This document shows, piece after piece, positions 11,515 through 51,507 of a stretch of DNA of 64,000 nt. Numbering within the stretch: position 1 is the stretch's first letter; each line of letters opens with the position of its first letter. The position numbers and the translations under genes are program-made. Location of the stretch: IMG/VR virus record IMGVR_UViG_3300037882_003354, positions 124,001 through 188,000 of that record; one strand, 5' to 3'. The notes beneath the pieces were generated by a model. The model saw only the letters and a list, made by a program, of their open reading frames with translations. It did no database searches and was not told where the DNA came from.

Positions 11515-11520
11515 GCATTC

Positions 11521-13474: not shown

Positions 13475-13480
13475 TTCACT

Positions 13481-14780: not shown

Positions 14781-15335
14781 ATGAACAAACGAATATCCTG
14801 CCAGGGACAACTGCTGGCCGCCAATCCGGTAAACCCTGCCGATGAACTCTGCAAGGCCGTCATCCTGGTGCTCAGCCACAACCCCGACCGGGCTATTGGC
14901 ATACAGATCAACAGCCCCCTGGAAAATCTCACACTACAAGCAGTGGCCGGTAAATTGGGCATAGAGTATGAAGGTGCAGACCCCATCTGGTCTGGTGGCC
15001 CAGCCGGACCAACTAAAATTCATGTCATACATAGTCTGGACTGGGCCAGCCTGAGCACTGTGCAAATCAACGAAGGAATTGGAGTCACCAGTGATGTGTC
15101 AGTGATTGCTGCACTCAGTCGTGGTGATGGCCCTGAACATTTCCGAGCATGTTCGGGATTCTGGATCTGGGAGGATGGACGTCTGGATCGGCAACTGGAT
15201 GTCCGGTCACAAGAGCCCTATACCTGGGAACTCAGCGCCGCCACCGTGACGTCTGTGTTCCAGGGCGAGGGCACCATGCAGTGGCTGGCCGTTCTGGAAG
15301 ACAGTGCCCAGCTGCAGATAGACAACTGGTTCTAA
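14781..15335 (+). CDS. YqgE/AlgH (DUF179) family protein
   Basis: LLAANP, AVILVLSH, AIGIQINSP, GGP, HVIHS, FRACSGFWIW..GRLD; TAAATA at 14769-14774. Confidence 0.8.
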   Translation: MNKRISCQGQLLAANPVNPADELCKAVILVLSHNPDRAIGIQINSPLENLTLQAVAGKLGIEYEGADPIWSGGPAGPTKIHVIHSLDWASLSTVQINEGIGVTSDVSVIAALSRGDGPEHFRACSGFWIWEDGRLDRQLDVRSQEPYTWELSAATVTSVFQGEGTMQWLAVLEDSAQLQIDNWF

Positions 15336-16822
15336 TCCCGCTCGGGGTTCACATCAGGCATGGTCAACATGCCGCGTATGCTGGCCGGCCGGCTGGATGC
15401 ATTGTTCTTGAACTTGTTGGCACTCATGCCCACAGTGGGATCAATGATCTCCCCAGTGGCATCGTCCACTGATGTGGTGCTGACCACGCTGGTACGCTTG
15501 AGTCCCTGATACGCACTATTACCACCGCCAGTGCTCTGCTGTGCTCGTTGTTGGCTGAAACTACTGGTGTCTTCATCCTCGTTCAAGTCTGTGATGCGCA
15601 GAGTGTCCAGGTTAAACTCCAGATCCACCTTCTGTCCCACACCACTACTGCTGCGTGTCTTCATGAACTGAATCTGATAACGACCACGTTCCTTCATGGC
15701 CCTGCTGGTAAAGATGCCAATGACATTGTCTGCTGTCATGATCTTGCTCAAGCCACCTGAAATGTGACTGTGGTCAAACTCAATCTCCTCCACTGCACTG
15801 CGATTCAACTGACTGGCAGTGACTGTGACACATTGCGTCTCCATGGCCAAGTTTCTGATCTCCTCACTCACGTATTTGTCCTTGACGAACAGATCACTGG
15901 GCGATACCTTTACTGACAGTGGCATCATCAAATCCAGGTAATCTATGAGCAAAACATCAGGTTTTACGCCTTTTTTCACCTGATATTCTTTAAGATATGC
16001 TCTGATATCGTTACAATTCTTGCCACTTGGCATGTACTTGATCTGTATGCTGCCCGCCTTCTTGCCCAGCATCTTGACCTTGAGTTCCACGTCATCAATG
16101 TTCTTGAAGATCTCGCGTGTGCTGATGCCTGTGGTCATGCTGTCCAGTCGCATGGCCACCAGACCCTCGCTCAACTCGAATGTCAGGTACAACACATTTA
16201 GACCCAGTTGCGCCCAGTTGACTCCCATGTTGGCCAGGAACAGACTCTTGCCGCCACCTGATCCTGCACAGAAGATGTTGAGCTCGCCGCGGTTAAATCC
16301 GCCATACAACTTGCGATCAATGCTGGGCCAGCCTGTGCTGATCTGCCCGTTGCCGTCTTTCAACTTGCTCAATCGACTGCGCGGATCTTCAAAGTAGTCA
16401 GTGCCCATGTCCTTGTTCAGACTGATCTGAATGGCATCCTTGATCAACTTCTCCACAGGTCCATAGTCTCCAGCCTCCAGCAGATCACTGCTCTTGATGA
16501 TGGCCCGCTCCAGGCCCTTGTGCCGGCTGAAGTTCTCAAACTCATCCATGAGCCATTCGTAGTTCTCACGGGGCAGGGTAATGGCATCGAAAGTGCTGCG
16601 TGTGGCTGCATTAACAATGCTGGCCTCGGGCATGACCTTGTATTCATCCACATACCGGTTGATAAACTCTGCGGCCGCCTGCAGACGTTGATCAAAGTTC
16701 TCATGATCAAAAATATTCTGACACCTGACAAATGTTTCAGCATCTGACAGGAACATCTCCAAATATAACTTCTGCATGGCAAAGTCATAGTTGGGTTTGA
16801 CCGCGGCTTTATTCTTCTGCAT
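15332..16822 (-). CDS. DnaB-like replicative helicase (T4 gp41-like)
   Basis: STGWPSID..LYGG, AGSGGGKS, LTFELSE, IDYLDLM, TASQLNR. Confidence 0.92.
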   Translation of the reverse strand: MQKNKAAVKPNYDFAMQKLYLEMFLSDAETFVRCQNIFDHENFDQRLQAAAEFINRYVDEYKVMPEASIVNAATRSTFDAITLPRENYEWLMDEFENFSRHKGLERAIIKSSDLLEAGDYGPVEKLIKDAIQISLNKDMGTDYFEDPRSRLSKLKDGNGQISTGWPSIDRKLYGGFNRGELNIFCAGSGGGKSLFLANMGVNWAQLGLNVLYLTFELSEGLVAMRLDSMTTGISTREIFKNIDDVELKVKMLGKKAGSIQIKYMPSGKNCNDIRAYLKEYQVKKGVKPDVLLIDYLDLMMPLSVKVSPSDLFVKDKYVSEEIRNLAMETQCVTVTASQLNRSAVEEIEFDHSHISGGLSKIMTADNVIGIFTSRAMKERGRYQIQFMKTRSSSGVGQKVDLEFNLDTLRITDLNEDEDTSSFSQQRAQQSTGGGNSAYQGLKRTSVVSTTSVDDATGEIIDPTVGMSANKFKNNASSRPASIRGMLTMPDVNPERD

Positions 16823-17807
16823 TTTCCAGTTTCCTCTTCAGTAGATGTAGATTTATCTCTCCACTGACCTTGTAGTGTAATATTGTGGACAACGTGTATA
16901 ACCTGCCGTATCGTTTCACAGCATCAGCCGCATCTTTGACATCTGACTCCCAGGGCGGCAAGCTCACGCTCCAGCCCTGATCGACAGCCACCTTGATCAT
17001 CTTGGCGCCCGCTCGATCACGATCAGGTACCACTATGACCTCCCGACCCAGGGAATTTATTCTAGCGCATTGTGTTTCATTGGGTTCATTGTGCATGATG
17101 GCCACTCCATCCACAGCAATGGCATCAAACTGTCCTTCAACTACTATAACAAATTTACGCTCGTTTGTCTGTCTATCCAGGTTAAAAACATAACCAGGTT
17201 GCGCATCTGTCAGGTACTTGGGTTTGCCGGGTGTAATCTTGCGACCAGTGTAGCCCACAATCTTGCCCTGATGATAGAAGGGAATGATGACTCTATCCCG
17301 GTAACCCTTGGCTGCACTCCAGTGCCAGTTGTACCAATCCCAGCCCATCTTGCGTTCATCCACCAGGTACGTGATTATATCAAGCAGTTCAGCTTCTTGC
17401 ATGCCCTGAGCTATCCATGTGTCCATGGGCAAACAGTCTGCAGGCAGAGGACGTTCCTCCAAGGCCAGTTGCAATGCTTTTTTGGATACAGGTTGATCGT
17501 CTTTGATCTTGAGTGCCAGCAGGTTCAACTTGCCTATGTCCATGTCACTAGCGCCCAACCATTTGAACAAATTTTTGGTATTCTTGCTCAGCAGCTTGCC
17601 CGGGGACCAGCCGGCTTTAAAATTACAGTTGAAACAACTGTATGCCCAGCCACCATCTGGGCTGGTCTTGATACCGCCTCGCTTCCTGTCATCCCTCTTT
17701 TCGCCGTTGTACGAACAACAGACCGAATTGAAACTATCCCACCCGCTGGGTGTGGATTTTCGATTGGGCGGCAGCAGTGAGAACAGGGCGGCCTGTATGT
17801 CGTTCAT
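16809..17807 (-). CDS. DNA primase (T4 gp61-like)
   Basis: Zn finger CC...CFNC, RVIIPF, GYTGR, TOPRIM VEGQFDA, PDRD, KDAADA. Confidence 0.9.
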   Translation of the reverse strand: MNDIQAALFSLLPPNRKSTPSGWDSFNSVCCSYNGEKRDDRKRGGIKTSPDGGWAYSCFNCNFKAGWSPGKLLSKNTKNLFKWLGASDMDIGKLNLLALKIKDDQPVSKKALQLALEERPLPADCLPMDTWIAQGMQEAELLDIITYLVDERKMGWDWYNWHWSAAKGYRDRVIIPFYHQGKIVGYTGRKITPGKPKYLTDAQPGYVFNLDRQTNERKFVIVVEGQFDAIAVDGVAIMHNEPNETQCARINSLGREVIVVPDRDRAGAKMIKVAVDQGWSVSLPPWESDVKDAADAVKRYGRLYTLSTILHYKVSGEINLHLLKRKLENAEE

Positions 17808-17812
17808 GCACT

Positions 17813-17841
17813 ATTTTAACACCTGTAGAGCACTTTGTCAA
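17813..17841 (-). promoter_or_regulatory. sigma70 promoter giving a leaderless primase mRNA
   Basis: TTGACA-17-TAAAAT-agtgc-ATG on the minus strand. Confidence 0.75.
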
Positions 17842-18652
17842 ATGAACCGTAATATGCAGGATTGTCGTTGTCAAATTCAGCAGGTGCAGTGGCTGGCACA
17901 TACATGATTCGAACATAGGAAAAGATGCCGTTGAAGTTTACATAATCAACACCGGTGAAGTCGTCGTAAGACAGTGTTTGTACAGTTACGTATCGATCAA
18001 AACTTTGCGGGCTGTTGTACAAGGTGCCCTGTACATACACGGTGCCACGGAAACCGGTCATGTACATGGCCATGGTGTGCAAGGCAGTGTTACTATTATA
18101 CTCTGGGCATGCATAAACATTACCGCTCTTGTGCTCGTACTGATTGGTAAATGAATTAAATGATTTGTTAAAACTCACGATCTCTTGGCTGGACTGTAGC
18201 ACAGGATTAATGTCTTCGGCCAAGTGAACAGTGCCAGCAACTCCGTAATAGGTGTTGGCGTAAGTGGGCAAATACGTGCCGTCATCAGGATCTCGATACT
18301 TGACGCTGAATTGATAACTGGACTTGGTGAGATCCATGGTGTCGCTTTCCGTCAGGGTCAGCAGGGCCAGTCCCCGTGTGCTGGTGTTGGTCTCAATGAC
18401 CTCCAGTTGCTTCTCCAGCACCAGCCGTTGGCTGATGGTGTCGAACATGGAGAATACAAATGTCTGCGTGTTGCTGATGGACACTCGCTTTTGATCGCTA
18501 TTCTTAAACTGAATGCGTACCTTGTTCTTGATTCCCTTTTGAATCTTGAGATCGTGCTGATACATAACTTGATTGACTCCTCGTACAGTGGGGTACAAAT
18601 CTAATATTACATCCAGATTGTTGTCATATAAATAGATTGGTAAATTTTGCAT
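17816..18652 (-). CDS. hypothetical, likely virion structural protein
   Basis: beta-rich; start MQNLPIY 5 nt after TAAATA (18658-18663). Confidence 0.7.
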   Translation of the reverse strand: MQNLPIYLYDNNLDVILDLYPTVRGVNQVMYQHDLKIQKGIKNKVRIQFKNSDQKRVSISNTQTFVFSMFDTISQRLVLEKQLEVIETNTSTRGLALLTLTESDTMDLTKSSYQFSVKYRDPDDGTYLPTYANTYYGVAGTVHLAEDINPVLQSSQEIVSFNKSFNSFTNQYEHKSGNVYACPEYNSNTALHTMAMYMTGFRGTVYVQGTLYNSPQSFDRYVTVQTLSYDDFTGVDYVNFNGIFSYVRIMYVPATAPAEFDNDNPAYYGSFDKVLYRC

Positions 18653-18672
18653 ACTAGTATTTATTGATAACA

Positions 18673-19056
18673 ATGTCAACAACCACCATCTTCCAAGAAA
18701 ACTATCCCTTTATCACCTGCATCAAGTCAAACGACATTGAATACGTGGGGTTGATCATCAATAACGATACCTATATCACCAGCATCTACGATATTGCAAC
18801 ATTACGTTCCGGTGATGAACGTCGCATTTTTTTGGAAATGGGAGAAGTATGGTGGTGGGAGAGCAACCGTAAAATACCCATCAACATATTTCTTAAAAAA
18901 GAAATGCAATTGTTCAAGTATACCATCAAAACTTTCAACAGCAAGGACACCGTTATAGTCTTCGGACCCACGGTAAATCTCAGTGAGATTGCCGAGAAAC
19001 GCGTCAAGCGCAAATCCATTCAATTGGTCAGGGTTCCCAAGCAGAATCTCGACTGA
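18673..19056 (+). CDS. conserved phage hypothetical protein
   Basis: WWWESNRKIPINIFL motif; TATAAATA at 18627-18634 upstream. Confidence 0.75.
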   Translation: MSTTTIFQENYPFITCIKSNDIEYVGLIINNDTYITSIYDIATLRSGDERRIFLEMGEVWWWESNRKIPINIFLKKEMQLFKYTIKTFNSKDTVIVFGPTVNLSEIAEKRVKRKSIQLVRVPKQNLD

Positions 19057-19618
19057 GGTTTTCACATATCAAATTCATCTGCATGACCACGGCATGTGCA
19101 TAGCCATAGGCATGGGATTTTTTCCATGAGTATTCCACAGTCTTGGTCCAGATGTCTGAGGCAATGGCCGCCCAACCCTGATGCGCACACACTGATATCA
19201 GATGCCGTTTTCCCGGTCTCAGCAGTGCCAGAAACATGGCCAATTGATCGATATTACGTGGCCTCAGTTCAGCCACCAGGTCATGATGACCATTGACATG
19301 AAATATCATGTCGGAAAACTCACGTTGCTCCAATAGTTCCCACATGGGTTCCACGGCCAGCAGCCGGTTGATATGAGTTTCGTCCTTGACATCCTGGTAC
19401 ACACCCACATTCAAAAAGTCTATCTTGAAATAACCCCGAGCCTGAGCCGCACGGTAGTCCATGCTGGCTGTGCCGGTCAAAGGGTTCACGGGAATTTCCT
19501 GGCAGTAGACACCAGTGTTATGACGCTTGACCGTTTTGCCATCATCAATGGTGGCTGGCACATGCTTGATCAACTCAAGTATGCTGTTGCGATCTCCAAA
19601 ATCAATGTCAATGTCCAT
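19028..19618 (-). CDS. miniature DNA polymerase III alpha (DnaE)-like protein
   Basis: MDIDIDF, RHNTGVY, FKIDFL, LAMFLALLRPG, YSWKKSHAYGY match DnaE motifs PDxDxD, HAxG, KxDFLG, AL.RPG, FNKSHA.AY. Confidence 0.75.
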   Translation of the reverse strand: MDIDIDFGDRNSILELIKHVPATIDDGKTVKRHNTGVYCQEIPVNPLTGTASMDYRAAQARGYFKIDFLNVGVYQDVKDETHINRLLAVEPMWELLEQREFSDMIFHVNGHHDLVAELRPRNIDQLAMFLALLRPGKRHLISVCAHQGWAAIASDIWTKTVEYSWKKSHAYGYAHAVVMQMNLICENLSRDSAWEP

Positions 19619-20384
19619 TGAGTGTCTGTGTTAGCTTGGTTAGATCAGCACAGGTGTACTGCTGATATTGTTTCTTTATATTGTCTGGCATGGGTATATA
19701 TTCTATTTTAGCACCATAATGCACGGCAATCGAGCGAGCCACTGCTTCAAATGATCTGGGCTTGCCAGTGCCCACATTCCAGATGCCAGATTCCTTGATG
19801 TCAAAAAACTTCTTATGCACATCAATTACATCATCCACGTGTACAAAATCCCTGAGGTATTGATCCGAGTTTTCAAATAATTTTATCACACCAGTCTCAC
19901 GAGCCTGCTTTTCAAATTTATAATAAGGGCTGGCTTGATCACCTTTGTGTTCTTCATGAGGACCGTGTACGTTAAAATACCGGAACCCCTGCACTCGGAT
20001 TCCGTTAAACTTGTTGGACAGCACATGGCGATCAAACAAATACTTGCTCCAGGCATAGGGGCTCTGTGGGCTGTGCGGTGCCTGCTCACTAAAATTTTTA
20101 CCCAACCCGTACACACTGGCCGAACTGGCATACTGCAAATTCACATTGTTGGTCTGGCAGGCCACCAATAATATGCAACTGAAGTCATGATTCTGTCGCA
20201 TGACTTTCTCAACATCAGTCTCAGTGGTGCTGCTGATGGCGCCCAGGTGTATGACCCAATCCAAACCTTCAAATTCGGGAATGGCATCACCCCACTCGTA
20301 ATAAGTCAGCTGGTGGTCGTCACGTAGTGCTTTGACCATGTTCTGGCCGATAAATCCTTTGTATCCCGTGATTAAAATTTTCAT
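19608..20384 (-). CDS. hldD: ADP-L-glycero-D-manno-heptose 6-epimerase
   Basis: TGYKGFIG, HLGAISSTTE, YASSASVYG, YAWSK, GFRYFNVHGP.E.HKG.QAS, RDFVHV. Confidence 0.85.
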   Translation of the reverse strand: MKILITGYKGFIGQNMVKALRDDHQLTYYEWGDAIPEFEGLDWVIHLGAISSTTETDVEKVMRQNHDFSCILLVACQTNNVNLQYASSASVYGLGKNFSEQAPHSPQSPYAWSKYLFDRHVLSNKFNGIRVQGFRYFNVHGPHEEHKGDQASPYYKFEKQARETGVIKLFENSDQYLRDFVHVDDVIDVHKKFFDIKESGIWNVGTGKPRSFEAVARSIAVHYGAKIEYIPMPDNIKKQYQQYTCADLTKLTQTLNGH

Positions 20385-20797
20385 TTGGTAGCCAATACTG
20401 CGTTGTAAATGTCTTGAACTTTCTTGGTTGTCGAATACAGGTCCAATCGATCATAGAATATGACTTCTTTGCAATGCTCTGCACCGATGATGTGCCGGCC
20501 TCGATAGTCACTGCCCTTGATCATGAGATCCGGTTCAAAGTTTTTTATCAGAGTGTCTAATTCTGTATCTGAGTCAAATATATCCACACGATCCACCGCC
20601 TTGAGCGCAAACAAGAAACTTGATCTTTCAAATTCGTTGTTGACTGGCCTGTGTTTGCCCTTGAGTTGGGCAATCCTTCGATCACTGTCAATAAGAACAT
20701 AAACGTAGGAGTCAGGGTGGCAACGGGCGTATTCCAATAATCGCAAATGGCCCACGTGTAATATATCAAATGATCCATTAACAATTATTTTTTTCAT
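20381..20797 (-). CDS. heptose-1-phosphate adenylyltransferase-like cytidylyltransferase (RfaE domain II / HldC-like)
   Basis: NGSFDILHVGH, SD..I..LKG..RP.N, KGSDY, STT. Confidence 0.8.
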   Translation of the reverse strand: MKKIIVNGSFDILHVGHLRLLEYARCHPDSYVYVLIDSDRRIAQLKGKHRPVNNEFERSSFLFALKAVDRVDIFDSDTELDTLIKNFEPDLMIKGSDYRGRHIIGAEHCKEVIFYDRLDLYSTTKKVQDIYNAVLATK

Positions 20798-21150
20798 TTT
20801 TGACTGTCCCCCGGCATCACTCGATAATTATCCTCCACAGAATCAGGTGTGCTGACTTCTATGATGGTGCCTGCCTGCAAGCAGGTGATACGATGCGGTA
20901 CCAGTGGATCATTATGATGAACACCACCTTCCCCGACAATTTTCTTATTCACTTTGGCAGTTAGGGTGTCAATGACTTCAATTTCAAACAGGCCACTCAG
21001 CACATACCAAGTTTCTTCTTTTTCAGAATGAAAGTGCATGCTAAACTTGCTGCCTGTATTGAAGTTAAGGAACTTGCTGCAATATTTGTCGTTGGTGACC
21101 CAGATGAGTTCTGAACCCCAGCCCTTTTCAACTTTTCCGTCTAATCTCAT
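20794..21150 (-). CDS. cupin (mannose-6-phosphate isomerase-like)
   Basis: KGWG.E, SMHFH..KEETWYV, PHR, EVST. Confidence 0.8.
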   Translation of the reverse strand: MRLDGKVEKGWGSELIWVTNDKYCSKFLNFNTGSKFSMHFHSEKEETWYVLSGLFEIEVIDTLTAKVNKKIVGEGGVHHNDPLVPHRITCLQAGTIIEVSTPDSVEDNYRVMPGDSQK

Positions 21151-21530
21151 AATTCTCCGCTTTCAGCCAATTTTAACATCAGGCTATATTGTTCGTAAGC
21201 CCGTCGTACAGACGGGTATTTTTCTTTCAAATGTTTTTCTTGTTCTTTTTGTTTCATGAGTATCTCAAACATTTGATGATGACCACGCTGTTGCATGTTG
21301 TTAAACACTTGTGATTCAAAATTTGCAATTCGTTCTAGTTCACTTTCTGCGATCTCTATAGTATACAATGGCTCGCTATCAACTACAATGTCTTCGTAAA
21401 CTCGATTAAAATCCGTGGGATCCTTGAAATAATTTACATTAACTTTGTGATATCGACTGGCTCGTTTGTTGGTGTCGATCACTTTAATGCCGTGTTGTTC
21501 ACAAAATGTTCTTAAATTTTCATTTGTCAT
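21147..21530 (-). CDS. hypothetical protein
   Basis: coupled ORF in the operon. Confidence 0.7.
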   Translation of the reverse strand: MTNENLRTFCEQHGIKVIDTNKRASRYHKVNVNYFKDPTDFNRVYEDIVVDSEPLYTIEIAESELERIANFESQVFNNMQQRGHHQMFEILMKQKEQEKHLKEKYPSVRRAYEQYSLMLKLAESGEL

Positions 21531-22228
21531 TTTATACCCACCTCATGACATATTTCTTTGACCAGGGCCACATCAGCCGGGGTCTCTCGGAATTTCTTCA
21601 TCCAGAAGGGAACATCAAATGCCGGTGCAATCATGTTCAACTGATCGTCGCTCATTTTCCTGACCATGGATTGGCCCACTGCGCTGTTCAAAACCATCCA
21701 GGGACTTATGCGACCATGCAGAATGTCGTGCACTGCCTTGTTCAGACTGACGTAGTTAAAGTAGTGAGCGAACTCTGCCTTGTGTTCATCGCCCCACTCC
21801 ATCATGGTCTGCAGGGTACGCTGTACCGCTGACTCAACCGGTTCAATCTTGATCATTTCAAACAAATATTTTTCGTACAGTTCATCTCTGCACCAGTGGT
21901 CCAATTTGACGCCACTCTTGATCACATAGTCAACAAACCTGTCAGGATAGATGGGATTGACGTTGTTGACAAAACTACCGAATTTTACAAACGCATTGTA
22001 ATAAGGGCTGTCGCAGAAGTCCTTGTACAGGATTTTTTTCTTGGAATTGTTGGTCAGTTGCCAGAATCTAATGAAGGCCGAGAACCCAGCCTGCACTCGC
22101 TTTTCTTTTTCCTGAAACGCACGACGCTTCTTTTCACACAGGTGGCTCACAAGTGTCTTGGGCTGACTGAATTTTTTGCCACAATAATCACACTGATGTG
22201 GTTGTGGCATGAGCAGGCTGTTACTCAT
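21527..22228 (-). CDS. hypothetical protein with N-terminal zinc finger
   Basis: CDYCGKKF......HLC. Confidence 0.75.
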   Translation of the reverse strand: MSNSLLMPQPHQCDYCGKKFSQPKTLVSHLCEKKRRAFQEKEKRVQAGFSAFIRFWQLTNNSKKKILYKDFCDSPYYNAFVKFGSFVNNVNPIYPDRFVDYVIKSGVKLDHWCRDELYEKYLFEMIKIEPVESAVQRTLQTMMEWGDEHKAEFAHYFNYVSLNKAVHDILHGRISPWMVLNSAVGQSMVRKMSDDQLNMIAPAFDVPFWMKKFRETPADVALVKEICHEVGIK

Positions 22229-22706
22229 ATTCCTTGCGCTGTTTTTTATCGAACCCCATGCTGTCGAACAACTCCTTGATGTCTTCCTTGGTCATCATTT
22301 TGGCCAGTATTTTAACTTCAGTCATCTTCATGGTAGGGTTCAATTCAGCCACCAGTCGTTCAATCTTGACTGCCTTTTCCTTCTTGGTGGCCGCCAAGTA
22401 GGGATGGTATGCTGGTACACCAGCACCCGTGGCTGCGTATAATTTCCATAGCAATGCCTTGTGATCCTTACTCAGCACCCAATGATTCTTGTTGACATAT
22501 TCGTTGGTGGTTTCCAAAAACCATTCCTGTATGTCACGATCACCCTGCACATTGGCAGTATACCGCATGAGTACATATGGGCTAAATGCCTTGCGTTCTT
22601 CATCGGTCAGGTTGCTGTAAAAATCGTAGTCTTTGTTGTCAACTGCGGCCAGTTCCCGCTTGATGTCCAACACTGGCGGCTTCTTGGGTTTAGGTGTTGT
22701 TGCCAT
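22221..22706 (-). CDS. putative clamp-loader small subunit (gp62-like)
   Basis: KAFSPYVLMRY helical motif; replication context. Confidence 0.45.
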   Translation of the reverse strand: MATTPKPKKPPVLDIKRELAAVDNKDYDFYSNLTDEERKAFSPYVLMRYTANVQGDRDIQEWFLETTNEYVNKNHWVLSKDHKALLWKLYAATGAGVPAYHPYLAATKKEKAVKIERLVAELNPTMKMTEVKILAKMMTKEDIKELFDSMGFDKKQRKEYE

Positions 22707-22938
22707 TTTCCATGCTCAAGTAATACAATATTTTAACACGTTCCAGTGCTGCGTGTAAAGCAGGATCTGTTCGTGCAGCCCGCCTGATGTTACCCCAAAG
22801 TTGATTCTCCATCATGTGTTCATGCAATGGACGGCCATCGGACGTTCGGGCATCCCTGATCAACTCACGTTCACTAGAACCCGATTCACGCTGATAGACG
22901 ATGTTACCGCCATCCGGGCTTTCGTATATCAGGGCCAT
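22690..22938 (-). CDS. small hypothetical protein
   Basis: IYESPDGG..VY.R motif; start reassigned to 22938. Confidence 0.7.
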   Translation of the reverse strand: MALIYESPDGGNIVYQRESGSSERELIRDARTSDGRPLHEHMMENQLWGNIRRAARTDPALHAALERVKILYYLSMENGNNT

Positions 22939-22939
22939 G

Positions 22940-23443
22940 TCACCAGCATTTGGTATAATCCACCAGTTCACTCTGGCGGCTGACTTCTTTGACAAAGTAT
23001 GCACACAGAGGTTTTTTACCTGCATGTAATGGAGTGCACAGCAATTGCCCGGGTCGCATTTTGGGAAAGTACCATTTGACATCTTGGTAGACATCGATGA
23101 TGTCTATCTCCAGTAATTCTGGTCTAAAACTGCTAAGTGGATTGAAACAGAAAGTTTTAAATCCGCGATCGTTAAGACTGGTGAGTGGCAGGATTTCCAT
23201 GTCCGGGCCCTCAGCATCACCCACAATGGTGCACCAATCCAGGGGCATGGTGATCTCGTGTGGTCCTATTTTTAGCACAACTGCTGGGCCTGTAAAACTT
23301 TCCAGGAAGATCAGGGGAATGAAAAAGTGGTCGGGGTTTTGATTGTCACTATTGTCCAGCACAGCAAATCGCAAGTCGTCATCAACTTCATCTGGCAGTT
23401 TATTGAGAAAGAATGTTTCGTTATCGAGCGTGAGTATTTGCAT
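22940..23443 (-). CDS. conserved hypothetical protein
   Basis: 167 aa, TAATG-coupled to uvsW. Confidence 0.75.
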   Translation of the reverse strand: MQILTLDNETFFLNKLPDEVDDDLRFAVLDNSDNQNPDHFFIPLIFLESFTGPAVVLKIGPHEITMPLDWCTIVGDAEGPDMEILPLTSLNDRGFKTFCFNPLSSFRPELLEIDIIDVYQDVKWYFPKMRPGQLLCTPLHAGKKPLCAYFVKEVSRQSELVDYTKCW

Positions 23444-24906
23444 TATTGGTATTTTACTTTCTCTATTGTGAATGGGTATTTGGCATCTTTGTAAAATCGT
23501 TTGCGTTCGGTCAGATGCCGCTTGGCGTATTTTGTGCTGGCAGTGATATCCCAGATGCTGACAAAGTCTTTGTCGTCGGCCTTTCTTATGCCCCGTCCAA
23601 TACTCTGTATAACACGGACAAAACTTTTCCCGGGTTCCAACAGAACCAGATTAAAAATCCGAGGGATATTAATACCCACAGCGGCAACACCATAGGTAGC
23701 CACAATAATCTTGTTATCAGCAGTCTTAATTTCGTCATATTCTTCTTTTCTGTCCTTGGTTTTAACTTCCCCAGAGACAAAAACACTACCTGGTATTTTT
23801 TCCGCTATGGCTCTTCCTGAATCAATTCGATTGACCAGCACCAGAGTGTTGCCACTTGCTGAGATGGTATTTACTAGTTCGCTGACATAATCCATGCGCG
23901 TGTTGTCTGTGACCAAATATTTAAGTTCTTCTGCATAACTGCCAAACTCTTTCCACTCCGCAGTCTGTATGATGTTCACATGACAGTTGCTCAGTACACC
24001 TTTCTCCTGCAACTCATGTGCGCTCACCCGATTGATCACCTCACCCAGGCTGGCACGGATGCTTTGGAATTCGTGATCGGCCTTGGGCACGGTGCCAGTC
24101 AGCCCCCATCTGATGGGAGCATGGGACAGATTGCGTGTCAACAAATTCCTCAACACGTCTGCTTTGGCCATGTGCACCTCGTCCACCATGACTGTGCTGA
24201 CACCTTCCAGCAACTCTGCCAGTGTCAGCAGTTCGGCATCTCTGCTGAAATCCTTGGACTTTTTATCCAGGATGTTCAGACTTTGCCAGGTGCAGATGGT
24301 GTGTGTTTTATCCAGATTTTTTCTATCACCATAGTACACACCCACATCCAGACCGCAGTTGAGGAAGTCTTCTTCAGTTTGTTCCACCAGACTCTTGTTG
24401 GGCACAATGGTGACCGTACGTCCATACTTTTCGCAGATCTTGGCCAGGGTGGCCGTGGTGATGGTTTTGCCAAATCCCGTGGCGATCTCTTGGATGCATT
24501 GTGGGTTCTTTAGGAACATGTTGACCACTTCCACTTGGTCATCACGCAGACGAATTGGTTGACCTGCAAATCGATGACCCACTGGCCATGTTTGCTCGCC
24601 CCAAAAATCTTCAAAAATCTCTTCAAACTCCAGTGCTGGGCTGGTGCGCAAGTCTTCCACTTCCACGTAATAGTTTTTACTTTCCAAGTATTCCAGCACT
24701 GGTTCTAACATGCTCAAGTAGGTGGTACCACCCAGTCCAAAGAAAGAAATGCTGCCATCCCAGCGACCCAATTTGTAACTGGGTCGGAATCTGGCCGATG
24801 GATCCTCGTACTTGAATTTTTTAACCAGAGCCTTGCGTGTATCGAGATCTAGATTCGATATCTTGACATTGACTTCGTCTAGGATTGTTACCCGTGCTGT
24901 GGCCAA
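23443..24906 (-). CDS. uvsW: UvsW-like SF2 helicase
   Basis: LRDDQ, ATGFGKT, DEVH, GLTGT, GINIPRI, IQSIGRG.R. Confidence 0.9.
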   Translation of the reverse strand: MATARVTILDEVNVKISNLDLDTRKALVKKFKYEDPSARFRPSYKLGRWDGSISFFGLGGTTYLSMLEPVLEYLESKNYYVEVEDLRTSPALEFEEIFEDFWGEQTWPVGHRFAGQPIRLRDDQVEVVNMFLKNPQCIQEIATGFGKTITTATLAKICEKYGRTVTIVPNKSLVEQTEEDFLNCGLDVGVYYGDRKNLDKTHTICTWQSLNILDKKSKDFSRDAELLTLAELLEGVSTVMVDEVHMAKADVLRNLLTRNLSHAPIRWGLTGTVPKADHEFQSIRASLGEVINRVSAHELQEKGVLSNCHVNIIQTAEWKEFGSYAEELKYLVTDNTRMDYVSELVNTISASGNTLVLVNRIDSGRAIAEKIPGSVFVSGEVKTKDRKEEYDEIKTADNKIIVATYGVAAVGINIPRIFNLVLLEPGKSFVRVIQSIGRGIRKADDKDFVSIWDITASTKYAKRHLTERKRFYKDAKYPFTIEKVKYQ

Positions 24907-26072
24907 TTGATCTCCATTTGCGCCGGCTGCTTGGAAAAGTTCACCAGATTTTCATGATTGCGAATAAACGCCTTGGTGGTATAATGAGCACTCTCAAAAC
25001 CCAGGTTTATGATACAATTAAATTTCATATTAGATTTTACAACAGTCTTGGGCAGCTTGCAACTGATAAAAACAATTTTGGTGGCATCCGTGATGGGTGA
25101 ATTAAGGTTTTGTGTTCGTACAAACTGGTTAAATTGCTGATGCCGGTCTGATGGCAATCTGAACATCACCGACATTTCTTCATCAGCAAAGCCTGCCTGT
25201 TTTAAGAAGTCATAGGCACACTGCGTGGTTTCAAGTTCATTACTGCCCGGAATAACAAACAGGCAGGGGCTCAGGTGTTTTACAATGTCTGTCAAACTGG
25301 ACATGTCCACTGTTTCGCTGTTGACATGGAATGATTCACCAGGGTCAAGATTTAAAAACTCCCTGGTGATGGGACAGATGGACTGGTTGTCCAACTGGTG
25401 ATTGATTGTTTCGTCCCAGGCGTAAATTCCTGCCCGCCTGCTTTCAAATACTGCTTCCAACACCGTGGTTGCCTGCAATCTGGGTAGGGCAGGACTCACA
25501 TTCTTATATTGTGGCATGCCCTGATCAAACACCAGTGTGGGCACATGTTGTTCAAAATCTTGCAGAATGGTGGAAATTTGAGACATGTAGGATTGTACTT
25601 CCTGGTCGCAAACAAATGCCTCCTGCTCCACCAATCGATTGAGGAAAGTCAGATTGTCTTCACTGACTGAAAATATCCAGGCCTTGTGTTCACCATCCCA
25701 ATGTGCAAAGTCCAGTGACTCCCTGGATTTTCGAATCAAGGCCAAGGTGTCTTCCCGGTAGGGAAATTCCACTTTGATGGCTCGTCCATACATGGGATAG
25801 TCAATCATGCTCAGGGACTTGATGGTGTTAACCGAGCGATGAGGGAATTTATATTGTGGGCAATCCAGGTATTGCTGAATGTCCTGACCCAACAGAGTGG
25901 TCAGTTGACCGGAGTATCGGTTGACCAGTTTTAAAGCCAGAGCAGCCTGCTTCTCTGTGAAGCCCGATTTACGATGGATTTGATCGTAGAAACTGGTGAC
26001 CACGTTGGTGTCCCAACGGTTGCATTTTACACCCAGAGTGGTCATGTACAATACCAAGTCTTCGATGGTCAT
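24888..26072 (-). CDS. hypothetical protein
   Basis: 394 aa ORF in the operon. Confidence 0.75.
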   Translation of the reverse strand: MTIEDLVLYMTTLGVKCNRWDTNVVTSFYDQIHRKSGFTEKQAALALKLVNRYSGQLTTLLGQDIQQYLDCPQYKFPHRSVNTIKSLSMIDYPMYGRAIKVEFPYREDTLALIRKSRESLDFAHWDGEHKAWIFSVSEDNLTFLNRLVEQEAFVCDQEVQSYMSQISTILQDFEQHVPTLVFDQGMPQYKNVSPALPRLQATTVLEAVFESRRAGIYAWDETINHQLDNQSICPITREFLNLDPGESFHVNSETVDMSSLTDIVKHLSPCLFVIPGSNELETTQCAYDFLKQAGFADEEMSVMFRLPSDRHQQFNQFVRTQNLNSPITDATKIVFISCKLPKTVVKSNMKFNCIINLGFESAHYTTKAFIRNHENLVNFSKQPAQMEINWPQHG

Positions 26073-26524
26073 AGTGTGATGTCTTCAAGCCCTGCGGCTC
26101 TGAGTTTGATGATGTTGCTCAATTGCCACTGTTTGATATCCAGGGCTTTAATGATGCCCAGCCACTGATTGCGTAGCATGGCAAATTCGTTGATGATCTT
26201 TTCCATGTCAACGACATCTGCCTCGCCTTCCACGTATTTTTCACAATCACGACTGCTAAGAGCACGTTGATAATTTTCCAGATACTTTTTAAAAGCCTTG
26301 GACCTGATGCGTCTAAGCTCGATGTTCAAATATTCTAGAATGGCTTCAATCTCTTGAAGTTGATTAAAACGCTGTTCAACGATGCCAGGCAAGGCGGCAC
26401 TGGCTCGTTCTACGTTTCCGTAGATCTTTACCTCTTGCCTGGCTACGTCTAACTCTCGATAGAAGTGATCTAAACTACTGGGAAGGTGTGCTATGTCTTT
26501 GCTGACCTTAGCATACCATGACAT
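26069..26524 (-). CDS. uvsY: recombination mediator UvsY-like
   Basis: helical, KYVEGEADV and GIIKALDIKQWQLSNIIKLR; between uvsX and uvsW. Confidence 0.75.
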   Translation of the reverse strand: MSWYAKVSKDIAHLPSSLDHFYRELDVARQEVKIYGNVERASAALPGIVEQRFNQLQEIEAILEYLNIELRRIRSKAFKKYLENYQRALSSRDCEKYVEGEADVVDMEKIINEFAMLRNQWLGIIKALDIKQWQLSNIIKLRAAGLEDITL

Positions 26525-26781
26525 CAGTCGTCCTCGTCTGCTTCGTACGAATCCCAATCATCCTCATCTACAAAATCCGAGGCGTCAGTATTTTCGTCTA
26601 TTACCAATTGGATGGCATGGTCCAGATGGGAATCATATCCCATGATGGCCTCAAGTGCGGAGATTTCAATCGATTGTCCCAGCAGGTAACCAACATAATG
26701 ATTGGCTGCCGTTTCTTTGTTTTTGTCTGTGATGTAGTCTTTAAACAAATCCCACATTTCGATGATCTGATCTTCTTCCAT
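26524..26781 (-). CDS. small acidic protein
   Basis: GAGG SD, TAATG/TGATG coupling; D/E-rich tail. Confidence 0.7.
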   Translation of the reverse strand: MEEDQIIEMWDLFKDYITDKNKETAANHYVGYLLGQSIEISALEAIMGYDSHLDHAIQLVIDENTDASDFVDEDDWDSYEADEDD

Positions 26782-27839
26782 TATGCCTCCTCTGGTTCTT
26801 CTGTAGTTGTTGACATGGGCACCACTGCCGAGTGATCCCACTCCAGCATGATGGTCATCAATTTGTCTTCGGTCCAACCTTTGCGGAATTCAGACATGAT
26901 CTCGCCAGTCTTCTTACTTATATATTGTAGCTTGTTTCCGCTCTTTGTCAACACATTCATCTTCTCAAACATGTCCAGCAGCCCTGATGTGGGGGCCATG
27001 CCTGTTGAGTAGGGAATCTTGACTTGCACAGTCTCAAACGGTTTGGCGTATCGTGTTTTCATGATCTTGCAAGCCGACCGAATGCCCAGTACGTCAGTGC
27101 TCTTGTTACCGTCTTCGTCTTCCTTGAGCTTGAGCTTCTTCATGGCCACTACAATGGAACTTGCATAAACAAATCCCTGCCCGCCTGAAATCTTGTCGTC
27201 AGGATCAAACATGTCCTGTGACGCATAGGTATGATTGGTGGCAATCAAGCCCACGTTGTAACTACCAAACATGTTGACGCAGTTACGTACCAGGGATGTC
27301 AGTGCCTTGGGCTTACGACCCATGTCACCCTTCATCTCACCTGCTTCAAACTGATTGACGTCAGTGGGAGTCAACAACATGCCCAGACTGTCAATGACAA
27401 ACAACACCTTGGGACGTTCATCCGCAGGCATGACTTTGTACTCTTTCATGAATTCTGAAATAGTTTTTGCCACATCGTCAATCATGGCCATGTTAAGTTT
27501 GAGTAGTTTGTCGTCACCAGTGTTCACACCCAGATCCACCAACCACTTTTCGTCCAAGGCATTTTCAGTATCAACCAGGATGACAAAAATGCCCTGCTCC
27601 TGTGCATGACGAATGATGTTTCCGGAACAGATGTAACTCTTTCCAGCACCACTTTCGCCTGCAAACACAGTCACCTTGCCAAGGGGCACTCCCTTGAAGA
27701 AGTCCCCGCTGATAAGATAATTCAGGGCATAGTTTCCAGTTGAAATCCAATCTGTGGGATCGTTAAATCCAATCCCCAGTCCATCAATACTCTTGGTGAT
27801 GGATTTACGGAACTTTGAAATATCAAATGATTTTGACAT
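26781..27839 (-). CDS. uvsX: RecA-like recombinase UvsX
   Basis: STGNYALN, AGESGAGKS, VDTENA, IDSLG, NHTY, SGGQG. Confidence 0.92.
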   Translation of the reverse strand: MSKSFDISKFRKSITKSIDGLGIGFNDPTDWISTGNYALNYLISGDFFKGVPLGKVTVFAGESGAGKSYICSGNIIRHAQEQGIFVILVDTENALDEKWLVDLGVNTGDDKLLKLNMAMIDDVAKTISEFMKEYKVMPADERPKVLFVIDSLGMLLTPTDVNQFEAGEMKGDMGRKPKALTSLVRNCVNMFGSYNVGLIATNHTYASQDMFDPDDKISGGQGFVYASSIVVAMKKLKLKEDEDGNKSTDVLGIRSACKIMKTRYAKPFETVQVKIPYSTGMAPTSGLLDMFEKMNVLTKSGNKLQYISKKTGEIMSEFRKGWTEDKLMTIMLEWDHSAVVPMSTTTEEPEEA

Positions 27840-27848
27840 CGGTTAACC

Positions 27849-47807: not shown

Positions 47808-48260
47808 TTAAATGCTCATTAAATGCGACATTTTTGGGTTATTTGCAATATAGGCACCAATTATTTTTGCCCAACTCTCAGCATCTTTCTCTTTGACACG
47901 AAAGTCGTAGTTTGTTGGCGGCACAAAAACACGATTGGTATCCTCAAATCTACCTTCCTTGATGGTGTCCATCCAGATGGTCCAGTGAGCGTCAAGGTTT
48001 GTCCTCATCTCAATCAAGGGCGCTACGAAATCGCAAACCACAAAATCTTTTTTTGACGCATCAGCCAATTCCCGCATGCGCAGACTCTGACGTATGCGTC
48101 CTTGGTGGCTGAAATCCCAATCGTTGTATTGTTCACGAACAACATCAGCATTTAACCATAATACATTAGGAACAAGCCCGGCTACGAGCAGCGCGGCCAG
48201 TGTGGTCTTGCCTGAGCCTGGTAGACCCAGTATTAGTATTCGTGTTGGCGTTTTAATCAT
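47808..48260 (-). CDS. adenylylsulfate (APS) kinase-like
   Basis: GLPGSGKTTLA, NAD.VR, DFS..GR..Q..RM, FVAP, F.PP. Confidence 0.75.
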   Translation of the reverse strand: MIKTPTRILILGLPGSGKTTLAALLVAGLVPNVLWLNADVVREQYNDWDFSHQGRIRQSLRMRELADASKKDFVVCDFVAPLIEMRTNLDAHWTIWMDTIKEGRFEDTNRVFVPPTNYDFRVKEKDAESWAKIIGAYIANNPKMSHLMSI

Positions 48261-48283
48261 GATGACAGTTCCATGTGTGGTGG

Positions 48284-51504: not shown

Positions 51505-51507
51505 GAT

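What the first reader, a model, noticed from the sequence alone, without database searches (positions are those of the whole stretch)
19608..21150. ADP-heptose biosynthesis genes inside the replication operon
Seen: HldD, an HldC/RfaE-II-like transferase and a cupin, with a GmhB-like gene (50854..51504) and a GT9-like transferase (55521..56459) about 30 kb away. GmhA and the kinase are not in this window. Established: the pathway is GmhA, HldE kinase, GmhB, adenylyltransferase, HldD. Inference: the phage boosts or re-routes nucleotide-heptose supply for its own transferase.
Basis: partly seen in the sequence, partly recalled or inferred. Interest (0 to 1): 0.6.

Follow-up and report, generated by a model that had tools for sequence, protein, structure and literature searches.

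The report
Phage-encoded ADP-heptose pathway, GmhA-less
A 322-kb freshwater jumbo phage carries its own, scattered set of genes for making the activated seven-carbon sugar ADP-heptose and a transferase to use it; this gene kit is already known from marine cyanophages, and the one fresh point is that a small cupin protein probably replaces the missing first enzyme, GmhA.

Summary
Window 19608-21150 (minus strand) has three ORFs with 4-nt ATGA overlaps: a PMI-like cupin, an HldC/RfaE-II-like nucleotidyltransferase and a short HldD-like epimerase. They lie inside a co-directional block of replication and recombination genes. The GmhB-like and GT9-like genes are at the stated coordinates.

The window is part of a complete 322,512-bp phage genome with terminal repeats, found in lake metagenomes. 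Genome-wide there is one HldA/RfaE-I-like kinase, outside the window at 259,669-260,406. No GmhA or other SIS protein was detected.

The cupin family looks virus-restricted. Among 51 related viral loci with enough flanking sequence, 46 have a kinase, nucleotidyltransferase or epimerase next to it. None of 50 cupin-bearing viral records has a SIS gene. In some phages GT9, carbamoyltransferase, GmhB, HldC, kinase, cupin and HldD form one operon.

My reading is a self-contained viral ADP-L,D-heptose route. The cupin is the likely sedoheptulose-7-phosphate isomerase (about 0.5). The product feeds the phage's GT9 transferase in a glycan-tailoring operon just downstream of the tail-fibre genes. The acceptor is unknown.

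Such clusters are already described in cyanomyoviruses and jumbo phages, so this is a new member of a known kind. All five enzymes score below the NCBIfam equivalog cut-offs, and no activity has been shown.

The parts
20794..21150 (-). 118-aa cupin resembling the type II PMI C-terminal domain; proposed sedoheptulose-7-P isomerase standing in for GmhA
   Evidence: Pfam Cupin_2 and PF01050 just below cut-off. phrog_7851 at 1.8e-39. H39, H41, E46 and H86 plus KGWG and DSVEDNYR motifs invariant in 31 homologues. AF2 pLDDT 82.8. Cupin fold matches. hhalign to the E. coli CpsB PMI domain, E=2.9e-4. Synteny with kinase and HldC.
20381..20797 (-). HldC/RfaE-domain-II-like heptose-1-phosphate adenylyltransferase (138 aa)
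   Evidence: TIGR02199 E=7.8e-29, 100 bits, cut-off 181.5. phrog_7878 at 6.7e-34. HVGH and STT motifs. ATGA overlaps with both neighbours.
19608..20384 (-). Short-form HldD-like ADP-heptose 6-epimerase (258 aa)
   Evidence: TIGR02197 at 251 bits, cut-off 274.6. PDB 1EQ2 at 2.8e-50. 43% identical to E. coli HldD, catalytic residues invariant. Lacks the segment holding E. coli D31, N32 and K38; the short form is shared by 33 of 41 viral homologues.
21147..21530 (-). 127-aa ORF of unknown function, translationally coupled upstream of the cupin
   Evidence: No Pfam or PHROG hit. Conserved only in 7 closest relatives. Not similar to the cyanophage mini-HAD.
50854..51504 (-). GmhB-like HAD-IIIA phosphatase (216 aa)
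   Evidence: NF006506 at 78.8 bits, cut-off 178; TIGR01662 at 58.6 bits, above its cut-off of 44.6. DRDGV, KP and GDxxxD motifs present; the GmhB Zn-site cysteines are absent.
55521..56459 (-). GT9-family heptosyltransferase-like glycosyltransferase (312 aa)
   Evidence: PF01075 at 34.2 bits, above its cut-off of 22. AF2 pLDDT 92.1. Foldseek top hits are WaaF 1PSW, TibC 4RB4/4RAP, 3TOV and WaaC. It is the only GT9 in the genome.
53818..55521 (-). NodU/CmcH-type carbamoyltransferase, adjacent to GT9
   Evidence: Carbam_trans_C at 1.1e-59 and Carbam_trans_N at 7.2e-20. GT9-carbamoyltransferase adjacency recurs in 12 viral loci.
47808..53821 (-). Rest of the glycan-tailoring operon: APS-kinase-like P-loop kinase, GT2, sulfotransferase, GT4, (GmhB-like), two phrog_1574 proteins, sulfotransferase
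   Evidence: Pfam and PHROG hits. Genes overlap or are separated by no more than 3 nt.
56528..63928 (-). Two giant tail-fibre/tail-spike-like proteins directly upstream of the glycan operon (context and possible acceptor)
   Evidence: phrog_23837, phrog_4636, phrog_6002 and phrog_5668. Peptidase_S74 chaperone domains. 51-nt repeats.
15332..19618 (-). Downstream replication genes: phrog_11778, a 288-aa protein, primase-like protein, DnaB-like helicase (context)
21527..28862 (-). Upstream block: zinc-finger protein, small ORFs, UvsW-like helicase, RecA/UvsX-like and gp32-like proteins (context)

Best explanation
The trio is part of a virus-encoded route to ADP-L-glycero-beta-D-manno-heptose that is split over three places in one 322-kb phage genome.

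Proposed steps:
1. The PMI-like metal cupin (20794-21150) isomerises sedoheptulose-7-P to D-glycero-D-manno-heptose-7-P, replacing the absent SIS enzyme GmhA. This is inferred, at about 0.5.
2. A shortened HldA/RfaE-I-like PfkB kinase, outside the window at genome 259,669-260,406, phosphorylates C1.
3. The GmhB-like HAD-IIIA phosphatase (50854-51504) removes the 7-phosphate.
4. The HldC-like nucleotidyltransferase (20381-20797) makes ADP-D,D-heptose.
5. The short HldD-like SDR (19608-20384) epimerises C6''.

The donor is then used by the phage's single GT9 heptosyltransferase (55521-56459). That gene lies in an operon with a carbamoyltransferase, two sulfotransferases, an APS-kinase-like protein and further glycosyltransferases, directly downstream of the tail-fibre genes. 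The product would be a decorated, heptose-containing glycan. The acceptor is not shown. I lean towards the phage's own fibre or virion proteins (about 45%) over a host envelope glycan (about 35%).

Placement among replication genes implies co-expression with them, so the nucleotide-sugar pool would be built before the late genes are expressed.

Shown: gene identities at family level, operon structure, genome-wide gene inventory, conserved neighbourhoods. Inferred: every substrate, the cupin's reaction, the acceptor and the timing.
For: HldD acts at C6'', a stereocentre that exists only in heptoses. The enzyme here is 43% identical to E. coli HldD with all catalytic residues invariant in 45 of 45 viral homologues. 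This fixes the pathway as heptose rather than hexose.

Genome-wide there is one kinase, one SDR epimerase, one GT9 and no SIS/GmhA.

Cupin linkage:
- Of 51 viral loci with at least 2.5 kb on both sides, 39 have kinase plus HldC and 46 have at least one pathway gene within 4 kb on the same strand.
- In cultured phages, 31 of the 35 records with a kinase match also carry the cupin. The other four are a bacterial record and three weak or partial hits. None of the cupin or kinase phage records is among the 13 records with a GmhA match.
- 0 of 50 cupin-bearing viral records have SIS_2.
- Cyanophage clusters hold kinase, nucleotidyltransferase, mini-HAD, cupin and epimerase, which is five enzymes for five steps only if the cupin is the isomerase. 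Cyanobacterial LPS lacks heptose (PMC4390846).

The cupin has a 3His-1Glu metal site and PMI type II-like motifs. Its fold matches stand-alone cupin sugar isomerases, including the 112-aa T. kodakarensis PMI 7ZVY (Z 12.4), cPGI and D-lyxose isomerase. PMI and GmhA catalyse the same C1-C2 aldose-ketose isomerisation to a manno configuration (established chemistry).

Link to GT9: single-operon arrangements occur in other phages, and 14 of 14 GT9 loci have HldD against 28 of 66 others, Fisher p=4e-5, with loci not independent. The GT9 fold is confirmed.

The glycan operon abuts tail-fibre genes here and in S-CAM3.
Against: - All five enzymes score below NCBIfam equivalog cut-offs. The kinase and HldD are shortened forms, and HldD lacks the segment that holds D31, N32 and K38 in E. 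coli.
- The GmhB-like protein lacks the Zn-site cysteines and apparently the motif II Thr.
- The cupin fold is generic. Its best structural match is the CapF C3-epimerase cupin domain (Z 15.9), followed by KdgF, not a phosphosugar isomerase. Similarity to PMI is weak (PF01050 at 23.1 bits against a cut-off of 23.6).
- The cupin is not strictly tied to the pathway. A complete 354,680-bp relative has the cupin and an HldC-like gene but no kinase. An 86%-complete record has the cupin alone. Five of 51 well-flanked loci have no pathway gene nearby and sit among nucleotide-metabolism genes.
- The host is unknown and may supply GmhA.
- The synteny census started from the cupin, so it is biased towards finding cupin-containing clusters.
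Confidence: 0.6

Rival explanations
1. The phage supplies only the later steps and relies on the host's GmhA. The cupin does something else in sugar chemistry. One option is a metal-dependent epimerase or keto-enol isomerase acting on a nucleotide-sugar or uronate, like the cupin domain of CapF or KdgF. Another is an ordinary PMI feeding mannose metabolism.
For: The best structural matches are the CapF cupin domain (Z 15.9, rmsd 1.8, 111 residues aligned) and KdgF. An SDR is adjacent, as in CapF's SDR-plus-cupin architecture. The cupin occurs without the kinase in one complete genome and without any pathway gene in some loci. The host is unknown.
Against: - The cupin stays next to kinase plus nucleotidyltransferase in 12 of 51 well-flanked loci that have no HldD or SDR nearby, so it does not need an SDR partner.
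- No 4,6-dehydratase or other enzyme that would make a keto-sugar is present; the genome has a single SDR.
- Cyanophage hosts have heptose-free LPS.
- The cupin keeps PMI type II-like motifs.
Confidence: 0.27
2. The heptose donor is used on host envelope glycans (LPS core, O-antigen or capsule) to mask receptors and block superinfection. This is the reading given for the cyanophage clusters.
For: Iyer et al. 2021 interpret the same gene kit as capsular polysaccharide or O-antigen diversification against superinfection (PMC7824862). The GT9 model's top hit is the LPS heptosyltransferase WaaF, and WaaC is also among the hits. Expression alongside replication genes would suit a function needed before lysis.
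Against: The GT9 model matches the protein O-heptosyltransferase TibC about as well. The operon lies directly behind tail-fibre genes here and in S-CAM3. Cyanobacterial LPS has no Kdo-heptose core to extend. A lytic jumbo phage has little time to remodel exported LPS (inference).
Confidence: 0.35
3. The sugar genes sit in the replication block because the activated heptose decorates phage DNA (a sugar hypermodification).
For: The trio is embedded among helicase, primase, RecA-like and gp32-like genes in this lineage, in at least 10 relatives. Cupin-only loci lie beside dCMP deaminase, GTP cyclohydrolase I, RNase H-like and nuclease genes. The kinase sits beside a QueE-like gene.
Against: In other lineages the same genes are fused with GT9, carbamoyltransferase and tail-fibre genes. 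The only candidate transferase has a GT9 fold typical of LPS or protein acceptors. No TGT/DpdA is present. The single ThyA-family gene looks canonical at 345 bits. Gene order in jumbo phages is weak evidence.
Confidence: 0.04

Closest known systems
Bacterial ADP-L-glycero-beta-D-manno-heptose pathway (GmhA, HldE or HldA+HldC, GmhB, HldD) feeding GT9 heptosyltransferases WaaC/WaaF
   Same: PfkB-type kinase with the SPEAPVPV and GAGD motifs, cytidylyltransferase-fold nucleotidyltransferase, HAD-IIIA phosphatase, HldD-type SDR with the S/Y/K plus K178 catalytic set, and a GT9 transferase.
   Different: No SIS-type GmhA; a PMI-like cupin sits in its place. The kinase (245 aa against about 315) and HldD (258 aa against 310) are shortened. 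All proteins score below equivalog cut-offs. The genes are scattered over three loci of a virus.
Cyanomyovirus and jumbo-phage 'LPS / capsular polysaccharide modification' gene clusters (P-SSM2, S-SSM7, S-CAM1/3, P-TIM68; Iyer et al. 2021, PMC7824862; PMC7378029)
   Same: Same protein families at 32-47% identity: cupin, kinase, nucleotidyltransferase, epimerase, carbamoyltransferase, glycosyltransferases and a HAD phosphatase, often next to tail-fibre genes.
   Different: Here the kit is split. The trio lies inside the replication block, the kinase beside QueE, and the rest behind the tail fibres. The phosphatase is GmhB-like instead of the cyanophage mini-HAD. The phage comes from freshwater and is 322 kb. 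Sulfotransferases and an APS-kinase-like gene are added.
Stand-alone cupin aldose-ketose isomerases: type II PMI C-terminal domain, T. kodakarensis PMI (7ZVY), archaeal cupin PGI (1J3P), D-lyxose isomerase (7NZO)
   Same: Single small cupin barrel, a His/His/Glu/His metal motif and (K/R)xWG and EV...ED..R motifs like type II PMI. Fold Z 11.7-12.4.
   Different: Sequence similarity is marginal. PMI has Q-x-H where this protein has H-x-H. There is no biochemical evidence for any substrate. The highly conserved C-terminal DSVEDNYRVxPGDSQ tail is specific to the viral family.
TibC/AAH bacterial autotransporter heptosyltransferases (protein O-heptosylation)
   Same: GT9 fold; the model matches TibC (4RB4, 4RAP) at E about 3e-10. 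The neighbouring candidate acceptors are long repeat-rich fibre proteins.
   Different: 12% identity and about 90 residues shorter. The iron-finger and dodecamer features were not examined. No evidence of protein glycosylation.

Membership tests
ADP-heptose (beta) biosynthesis pathway | GmhA: SIS-fold sedoheptulose-7-P isomerase | tested here: not met
   No PF13580, PF01380 or TIGR00441 match in the complete 322,512-bp genome at E up to 1-10. Also absent from 50 of 50 related cupin-bearing viral records.
ADP-heptose (beta) biosynthesis pathway | HldA/HldE-I: PfkB kinase specific for heptose-7-P | tested here: inconclusive
   One gene, outside the window. Best family TIGR02198 at 137.7 bits, far below the cut-off of 345. 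SPEAPVPV and GAGD motifs present. PDB 4E84 HldA matches at 3.4e-15. It is 70 aa shorter than bacterial forms.
ADP-heptose (beta) biosynthesis pathway | GmhB: HAD-IIIA heptose-1,7-bisphosphate 7-phosphatase | tested here: inconclusive
   Passes HAD-IIIA (TIGR01662, 58.6 bits against 44.6). Best equivalog is GmhB NF006506 at 78.8 bits against 178. Motifs I, III and IV present; Zn-site cysteines absent.
ADP-heptose (beta) biosynthesis pathway | HldC/HldE-II: cytidylyltransferase-fold heptose-1-P adenylyltransferase | tested here: inconclusive
   TIGR02199 is the best hit by a wide margin (100 bits against 43 for TagD) but is below the cut-off of 181.5. HxGH and STT motifs present.
ADP-heptose (beta) biosynthesis pathway | HldD: SDR with S116, Y140, K144 and the second base K178 | tested here: met
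   All catalytic and substrate residues checked are conserved, and invariant in 45 of 45 viral homologues. 43% identical to E. coli HldD. The TIGR02197 score of 251 is below the cut-off of 274.6 because about 28 N-terminal-domain residues and about 25 C-terminal residues are missing.
ADP-heptose (beta) biosynthesis pathway | Enzymes act on heptose phosphates and ADP-heptose | not testable with these tools
   Needs enzymology or complementation.
Glycosyltransferase family 9 | PF01075 match above gathering score and a GT-B fold closest to known heptosyltransferases | tested here: met
   34.2 bits against a cut-off of 22. AF2 pLDDT 92; the top 30 or so Foldseek hits are WaaF, TibC, 3TOV and WaaC, then a gap of about four orders of magnitude in E-value (with only two GT9-like NDH-subunit chains in between) before other GT-B enzymes.
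Type II PMI-like / cupin sugar isomerases | Cupin barrel with metal-binding HxH...E...H (QxH in PMI) and Pfam PF01050 | tested here: inconclusive
   Fold and metal motif are met. PF01050 scores 23.1 bits against a cut-off of 23.6 for this protein, though many homologues carry a precomputed PF01050 hit. hhalign to CpsB gives E=2.9e-4 over 56 columns.
Cyanophage/jumbo-phage sugar-modification clusters (Iyer et al. 2021) | SDR epimerase, cupin, PfkB kinase, HIGH nucleotidyltransferase, glycosyltransferases, carbamoyltransferase and HAD phosphatase encoded by one phage | tested here: met
   All components are present in this genome, with orthologous families in cyanophages. Here they are dispersed rather than clustered.

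The most novel reading that the evidence does not exclude
The 118-aa cupin family, which looks virus-restricted, is a new, non-SIS class of sedoheptulose-7-phosphate isomerase (an analogue of GmhA). It would give phages, including cyanophages whose hosts make no heptose, a self-contained five-enzyme route from a central metabolite to ADP-heptose. That donor would be used to heptosylate, and then carbamoylate and sulfate, the phage's own tail fibres.
Probability: 0.3. Interest if true: 0.65.

Novelty: new member of a known kind. Interest (0 to 1): 0.4.

Why it matters
Phage-encoded nucleotide-heptose genes are usually listed as 'LPS auxiliary metabolic genes' without a worked-out pathway. Their database labels are also wrong in places. 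The cupin is called 'cysteine dioxygenase', and a mini-HAD phosphatase is called 'phosphoheptose isomerase'.

This analysis shows that the kit recurs in hundreds of aquatic viral contigs. It was never found with GmhA and almost always includes one conserved cupin. That gives a concrete, cheap experiment: complementation of E. coli delta-gmhA, or an S7P isomerase assay.

If the cupin is the isomerase, it would be a case of non-orthologous enzyme displacement in a pathway studied as an antibiotic target and as the source of the innate-immune agonist ADP-heptose. It would also explain how cyanophages can make heptose in hosts that lack it. The acceptor, whether virion fibres or host envelope, bears on host-range and superinfection biology. 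As it stands, the finding itself is an ordinary new instance of a described system.

Tried and rejected
- Nucleotide search of the 12-kb region against cultured phages found no match. Only protein-level relatives exist.
- I tested whether the coupled 127-aa ORF is the cyanophage 'phosphoheptose isomerase'. There is no similarity. That cyanophage protein is not an isomerase either. It is a mini-HAD phosphatase: PNKP-HAD Pfam hint, PDB 9IQW at 8e-8, and 1XPJ. It has no homologue in this genome.
- I looked for the cupin family in 185,579 cellular species. There were only 8 loci, all on MAG contigs and several of 150-357 kb, probably mis-binned phages. Cellular context therefore could not inform function.
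- Profile search of the cupin against PDB sequences gave only the generic metal-cupin signal: oxalate decarboxylases and KdgF.
- The PHROG label 'cysteine dioxygenase' for the cupin is rejected. The metal site is 3His-1Glu, the context is sugar genes, and there is no supporting evidence.
- DNA hypermodification reading: no TGT/DpdA and ThyA looks canonical. It is kept only as a low-probability rival.
- An S7P-boosting transaldolase is absent.
- The promoter and terminator scan of the array gave terminator counts at chance level and nothing usable.
- There are no tRNAs in the window.
- RNA evidence is weak. One lake metatranscriptome holds short contigs on the 288-aa gene and on HldC; the HldC contig has 11 differences in 200 nt, so it comes from a relative. 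DNA carry-over cannot be excluded. This is not proof of transcription.
- The large representative-protein search was not used. The word search and family scans sufficed.
- A second structure job went to GT9 rather than HldD, so the fold integrity of the short HldD was not modelled.
Full report
**What is there.** The window is bases 124,001-188,000 of a single 322,512-bp viral contig with direct terminal repeats, judged 100% complete. The finding's coordinates match three minus-strand ORFs exactly.

- 20794-21150: a 118-aa cupin.
- 20381-20797: a 138-aa cytidylyltransferase-fold protein. Its best family by a wide margin is RfaE domain II / HldC (TIGR02199, E=7.8e-29).
- 19608-20384: a 258-aa SDR. 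Its best family is ADP-glyceromanno-heptose 6-epimerase (TIGR02197, E=1.3e-74).

Each gene overlaps the next by ATGA. The chain continues upstream into a 127-aa ORF and a zinc-finger protein, and downstream into phrog_11778. The array is flanked on one side by a UvsW-like helicase, a RecA/UvsX-like protein and a gp32-like protein. On the other side lie a primase-like protein and a DnaB-like helicase. 'Inside the replication operon' is therefore a fair description. A contig from an independent lake metagenome spans the whole 4.5 kb with about 1.2% differences, so the arrangement is real. The phage occurs in lake and freshwater metagenomes from 13 studies.

**How good are the enzyme assignments?** All are '-like', because every one scores below its NCBIfam equivalog cut-off.

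HldD is the strongest. It matches PDB 1EQ2 at E=2.8e-50 and is 43% identical to E. coli HldD. S116, Y140, K144, N169, K178 and R209 are invariant in 45 of 45 viral homologues, and Y272 in 44 of 45. It is a short form. It lacks the stretch that holds D31, N32 and K38 in E. coli, and about 25 C-terminal residues. Of 41 homologues from related viral loci, 33 share this 253-266-aa form, as do the cyanophage versions, so the form is conserved rather than decayed. HldD acts at C6'', a stereocentre that only heptoses have (established chemistry). This gene fixes the pathway as heptose rather than hexose.

The HldC-like protein has the HxGH and STT motifs. The GmhB-like protein (50854-51504) passes the HAD-IIIA model and has motifs I, III and IV, but it lacks the GmhB zinc-site cysteines.

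The GT9-like protein (55521-56459) passes Pfam PF01075. Its AF2 model (pLDDT 92) has WaaF, TibC, a Veillonella GT9 and WaaC as its roughly 30 best PDB matches. The next matches are two GT9-like chloroplast NDH-subunit chains at E around 1e-7 to 1e-6, and ordinary GT-B enzymes only appear from about E=1e-5.

**The rest of the genome.** There is exactly one PfkB kinase, at 259,669-260,406 on the minus strand. Its best family is RfaE domain I. It has the SPEAPVPV and GAGD motifs and matches HldA structure 4E84. It sits beside a QueE-like radical-SAM gene and a phosphoribosyltransferase. The genome has one SDR epimerase and one GT9. No SIS or GmhA protein was found with three different models at permissive thresholds.

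**The cupin.** A word search found 3,843 homologues, nearly all from metagenomes and 68-98% identical among the best 120. Invariant residues include H39, H41, E46 and H86, which form a classic 3His-1Glu cupin metal site. A KGWGxE motif and a C-terminal DSVEDNYRVxPGDSQ tail are also invariant. These resemble the type II phosphomannose isomerase domain:
- Pfam PF01050 scores 23.1 bits against a cut-off of 23.6.
- Many homologues carry a precomputed PF01050 hit.
- hhalign to the E. coli CpsB PMI domain gives E=2.9e-4.
- ESM Atlas neighbours are viral clusters tagged PF01050 or Lyx_isomer.

The AF2 model (pLDDT 82.8) is a plain cupin barrel. Fold searches are generic. The CapF cupin domain (Z 15.9) and KdgF come first. 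Small cupin sugar isomerases follow: T. kodakarensis PMI 7ZVY at 112 aa, archaeal cPGI, and D-lyxose isomerase, at Z 11.7-12.4. Fold alone does not decide the function.

**Comparative genomics.** I fetched 80 IMG/VR loci encoding the cupin. Among the 51 with at least 2.5 kb on both sides:
- 27 have kinase, HldC and HldD within 4 kb on the same strand.
- 12 have kinase and HldC without HldD.
- 7 have some other subset of the three pathway genes.
- 5 have none.

None of 50 cupin-bearing records has a SIS_2 match, four near-complete genomes included. In the cultured-phage collection the cupin occurs in 35 records, all cyanophages or marine single-cell viruses. The kinase occurs in 31 of those same records. 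GmhA occurs in 13 unrelated records and never in a cupin carrier. In 185,579 cellular species the family appears only on 8 MAG contigs, which are probably phage.

Cyanophage clusters (P-TIM68, S-CAM3) contain kinase, nucleotidyltransferase, cupin, epimerase and a roughly 110-aa protein annotated 'phosphoheptose isomerase'. That protein is in fact a mini-HAD phosphatase. This makes five enzymes for five steps only if the cupin is the isomerase. Cyanobacterial LPS lacks heptose (PMC4390846), so those hosts are unlikely to supply the intermediate.

PMI and GmhA catalyse the same C1-C2 aldose-ketose isomerisation to a manno product. My best reading is therefore that the cupin replaces GmhA.

There are counter-examples. 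A complete 354,680-bp genome has the cupin and an HldC-like gene but no kinase. An 86%-complete record has the cupin alone. Some cupin-only loci lie among dCMP deaminase, GTP cyclohydrolase I, RNase H-like and nuclease genes. I put the isomerase claim at about 0.5.

**Link to the distal cluster.** The closest relatives have the order zf-p127-cupin-HldD-HldC-kinase-phrog11778-primase-helicase (L004, L005, L025, L056, L061, L062, L070). Some others lack HldD at this position. This phage has moved its kinase elsewhere, so the module is mosaic.

In other lineages GT9, carbamoyltransferase, GmhB, HldC, kinase, cupin and HldD form one operon (L027, L029, L036, L063, L082). All 14 GT9-bearing loci carry HldD, against 28 of 66 others (Fisher p=4e-5; the loci are related, so this overstates independence).

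In the window the GT9 gene heads a tightly packed operon (47808-56459). It holds a carbamoyltransferase, two sulfotransferases, an APS-kinase-like protein, GT4, GT2, the GmhB-like gene and two phrog_1574 proteins. The operon lies directly downstream of two giant tail-fibre-like proteins with S74 chaperone domains and 17-residue repeats. S-CAM3 shows the same juxtaposition with fibre genes.

The acceptor is unknown. The GT9 model resembles the LPS enzymes WaaF and WaaC about as well as it resembles the protein O-heptosyltransferase TibC. I lean slightly towards virion or fibre glycosylation over host-envelope remodelling. A DNA-modification role is unlikely: there is no DpdA, ThyA looks canonical, and the transferase has a GT9 fold.

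**What is known.** Cyanomyovirus genome papers list heptose 'LPS' genes (PMC7378029). Iyer et al. 2021 describe cyanophage and jumbo-phage clusters with SDR epimerases, cupin 'sugar isomerases', PfkB kinases, HIGH nucleotidyltransferases, glycosyltransferases, carbamoyltransferases and HAD phosphatases. They read these as capsular-polysaccharide or O-antigen diversification (PMC7824862). I found no paper proposing a cupin-type sedoheptulose-7-phosphate isomerase.

**Verdict.** This is a new, freshwater, dispersed member of a known kind of phage sugar-nucleotide system. The specific, testable addition is the cupin-for-GmhA substitution. No enzyme activity, acceptor or expression timing has been shown. 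One metatranscriptome holds short matching contigs, which is weak evidence.

Noticed in passing
G000:C1:258190-261414 (L001), outside the window: The pathway's kinase sits between a phosphoribosyltransferase-like gene (L001 2224-2724) and a QueE-like radical-SAM gene (L001 3-734), with a 197-aa ORF of unknown function (L001 724-1317) between the kinase and QueE. The genome has no TGT/DpdA match, so a 7-deazaguanine DNA modification system looks incomplete, or serves another purpose.
   Followed up: partly
L002 5323-6092 (P-TIM68 gp194, gp195); L003 7089-7746 (S-CAM3 gp150, gp149): RefSeq/PHROG labels in cyanophages look wrong. 'Cysteine dioxygenase' is the PMI-like cupin. 'Phosphoheptose isomerase' is a roughly 110-aa mini-HAD phosphatase with a DxDGT motif that matches PDB 9IQW 'capsule biosynthesis protein' and 1XPJ.
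   Followed up: yes
window 56528-63928 (-): Two giant tail-fibre/tail-spike-like proteins (863 aa and at least 1,587 aa) with C-terminal Peptidase_S74 intramolecular chaperone domains and many 51-nt (17-residue) repeats lie directly upstream of the glycan operon.
   Followed up: partly
window 47808-50070 and 52997-53821 (-): Two sulfotransferases plus an APS-kinase-like P-loop kinase sit in the same operon. This suggests the phage also provides or uses PAPS to sulfate its glycan, which is unusual for a phage.
   Followed up: no
window 1-14000 vs 16000-58000: There is a sharp composition change. GC is 53-60% over a block of many small, mostly plus-strand ORFs, against 43-49% in the minus-strand replication, structural and glycan blocks. 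The change coincides with the strand switch near 15.3 kb.
   Followed up: no
window 14781-15335 (+): An AlgH-like (DUF179) protein is encoded convergently with the DnaB-like helicase.
   Followed up: no
L023 / G012 (354,680-bp complete viral genome); L065 / G034: Relatives carry the cupin without the kinase (G012 has only an HldC-like gene about 50 kb away) or without any detectable pathway gene (G034, 86% complete). The cupin is therefore not strictly bound to the heptose kit.
   Followed up: partly
L009, L031, L055, L077, L079 (cupin-only or cupin-plus-HldC loci): In these loci the cupin's neighbours are nucleotide-metabolism genes: dCMP deaminase, GTP cyclohydrolase I, RNase H-like protein, PD-(D/E)XK nuclease, metallophosphoesterase and a dual-specificity phosphatase.
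   Followed up: partly
GT9 model m18ec338ebd07 (window 55521-56459): After the bacterial GT9 enzymes, the next fold matches are subunits of plant chloroplast NDH-PSI supercomplexes (9GRX chain 1, 7WFF chain a). These are a GT9-like fold in a non-enzymatic context.
   Followed up: no
G000:C1:249476-250339 (-), outside the window: A strong ThyA-family gene is present (PF00303, 345 bits). No transaldolase was found, unlike many cyanophages.
   Followed up: no
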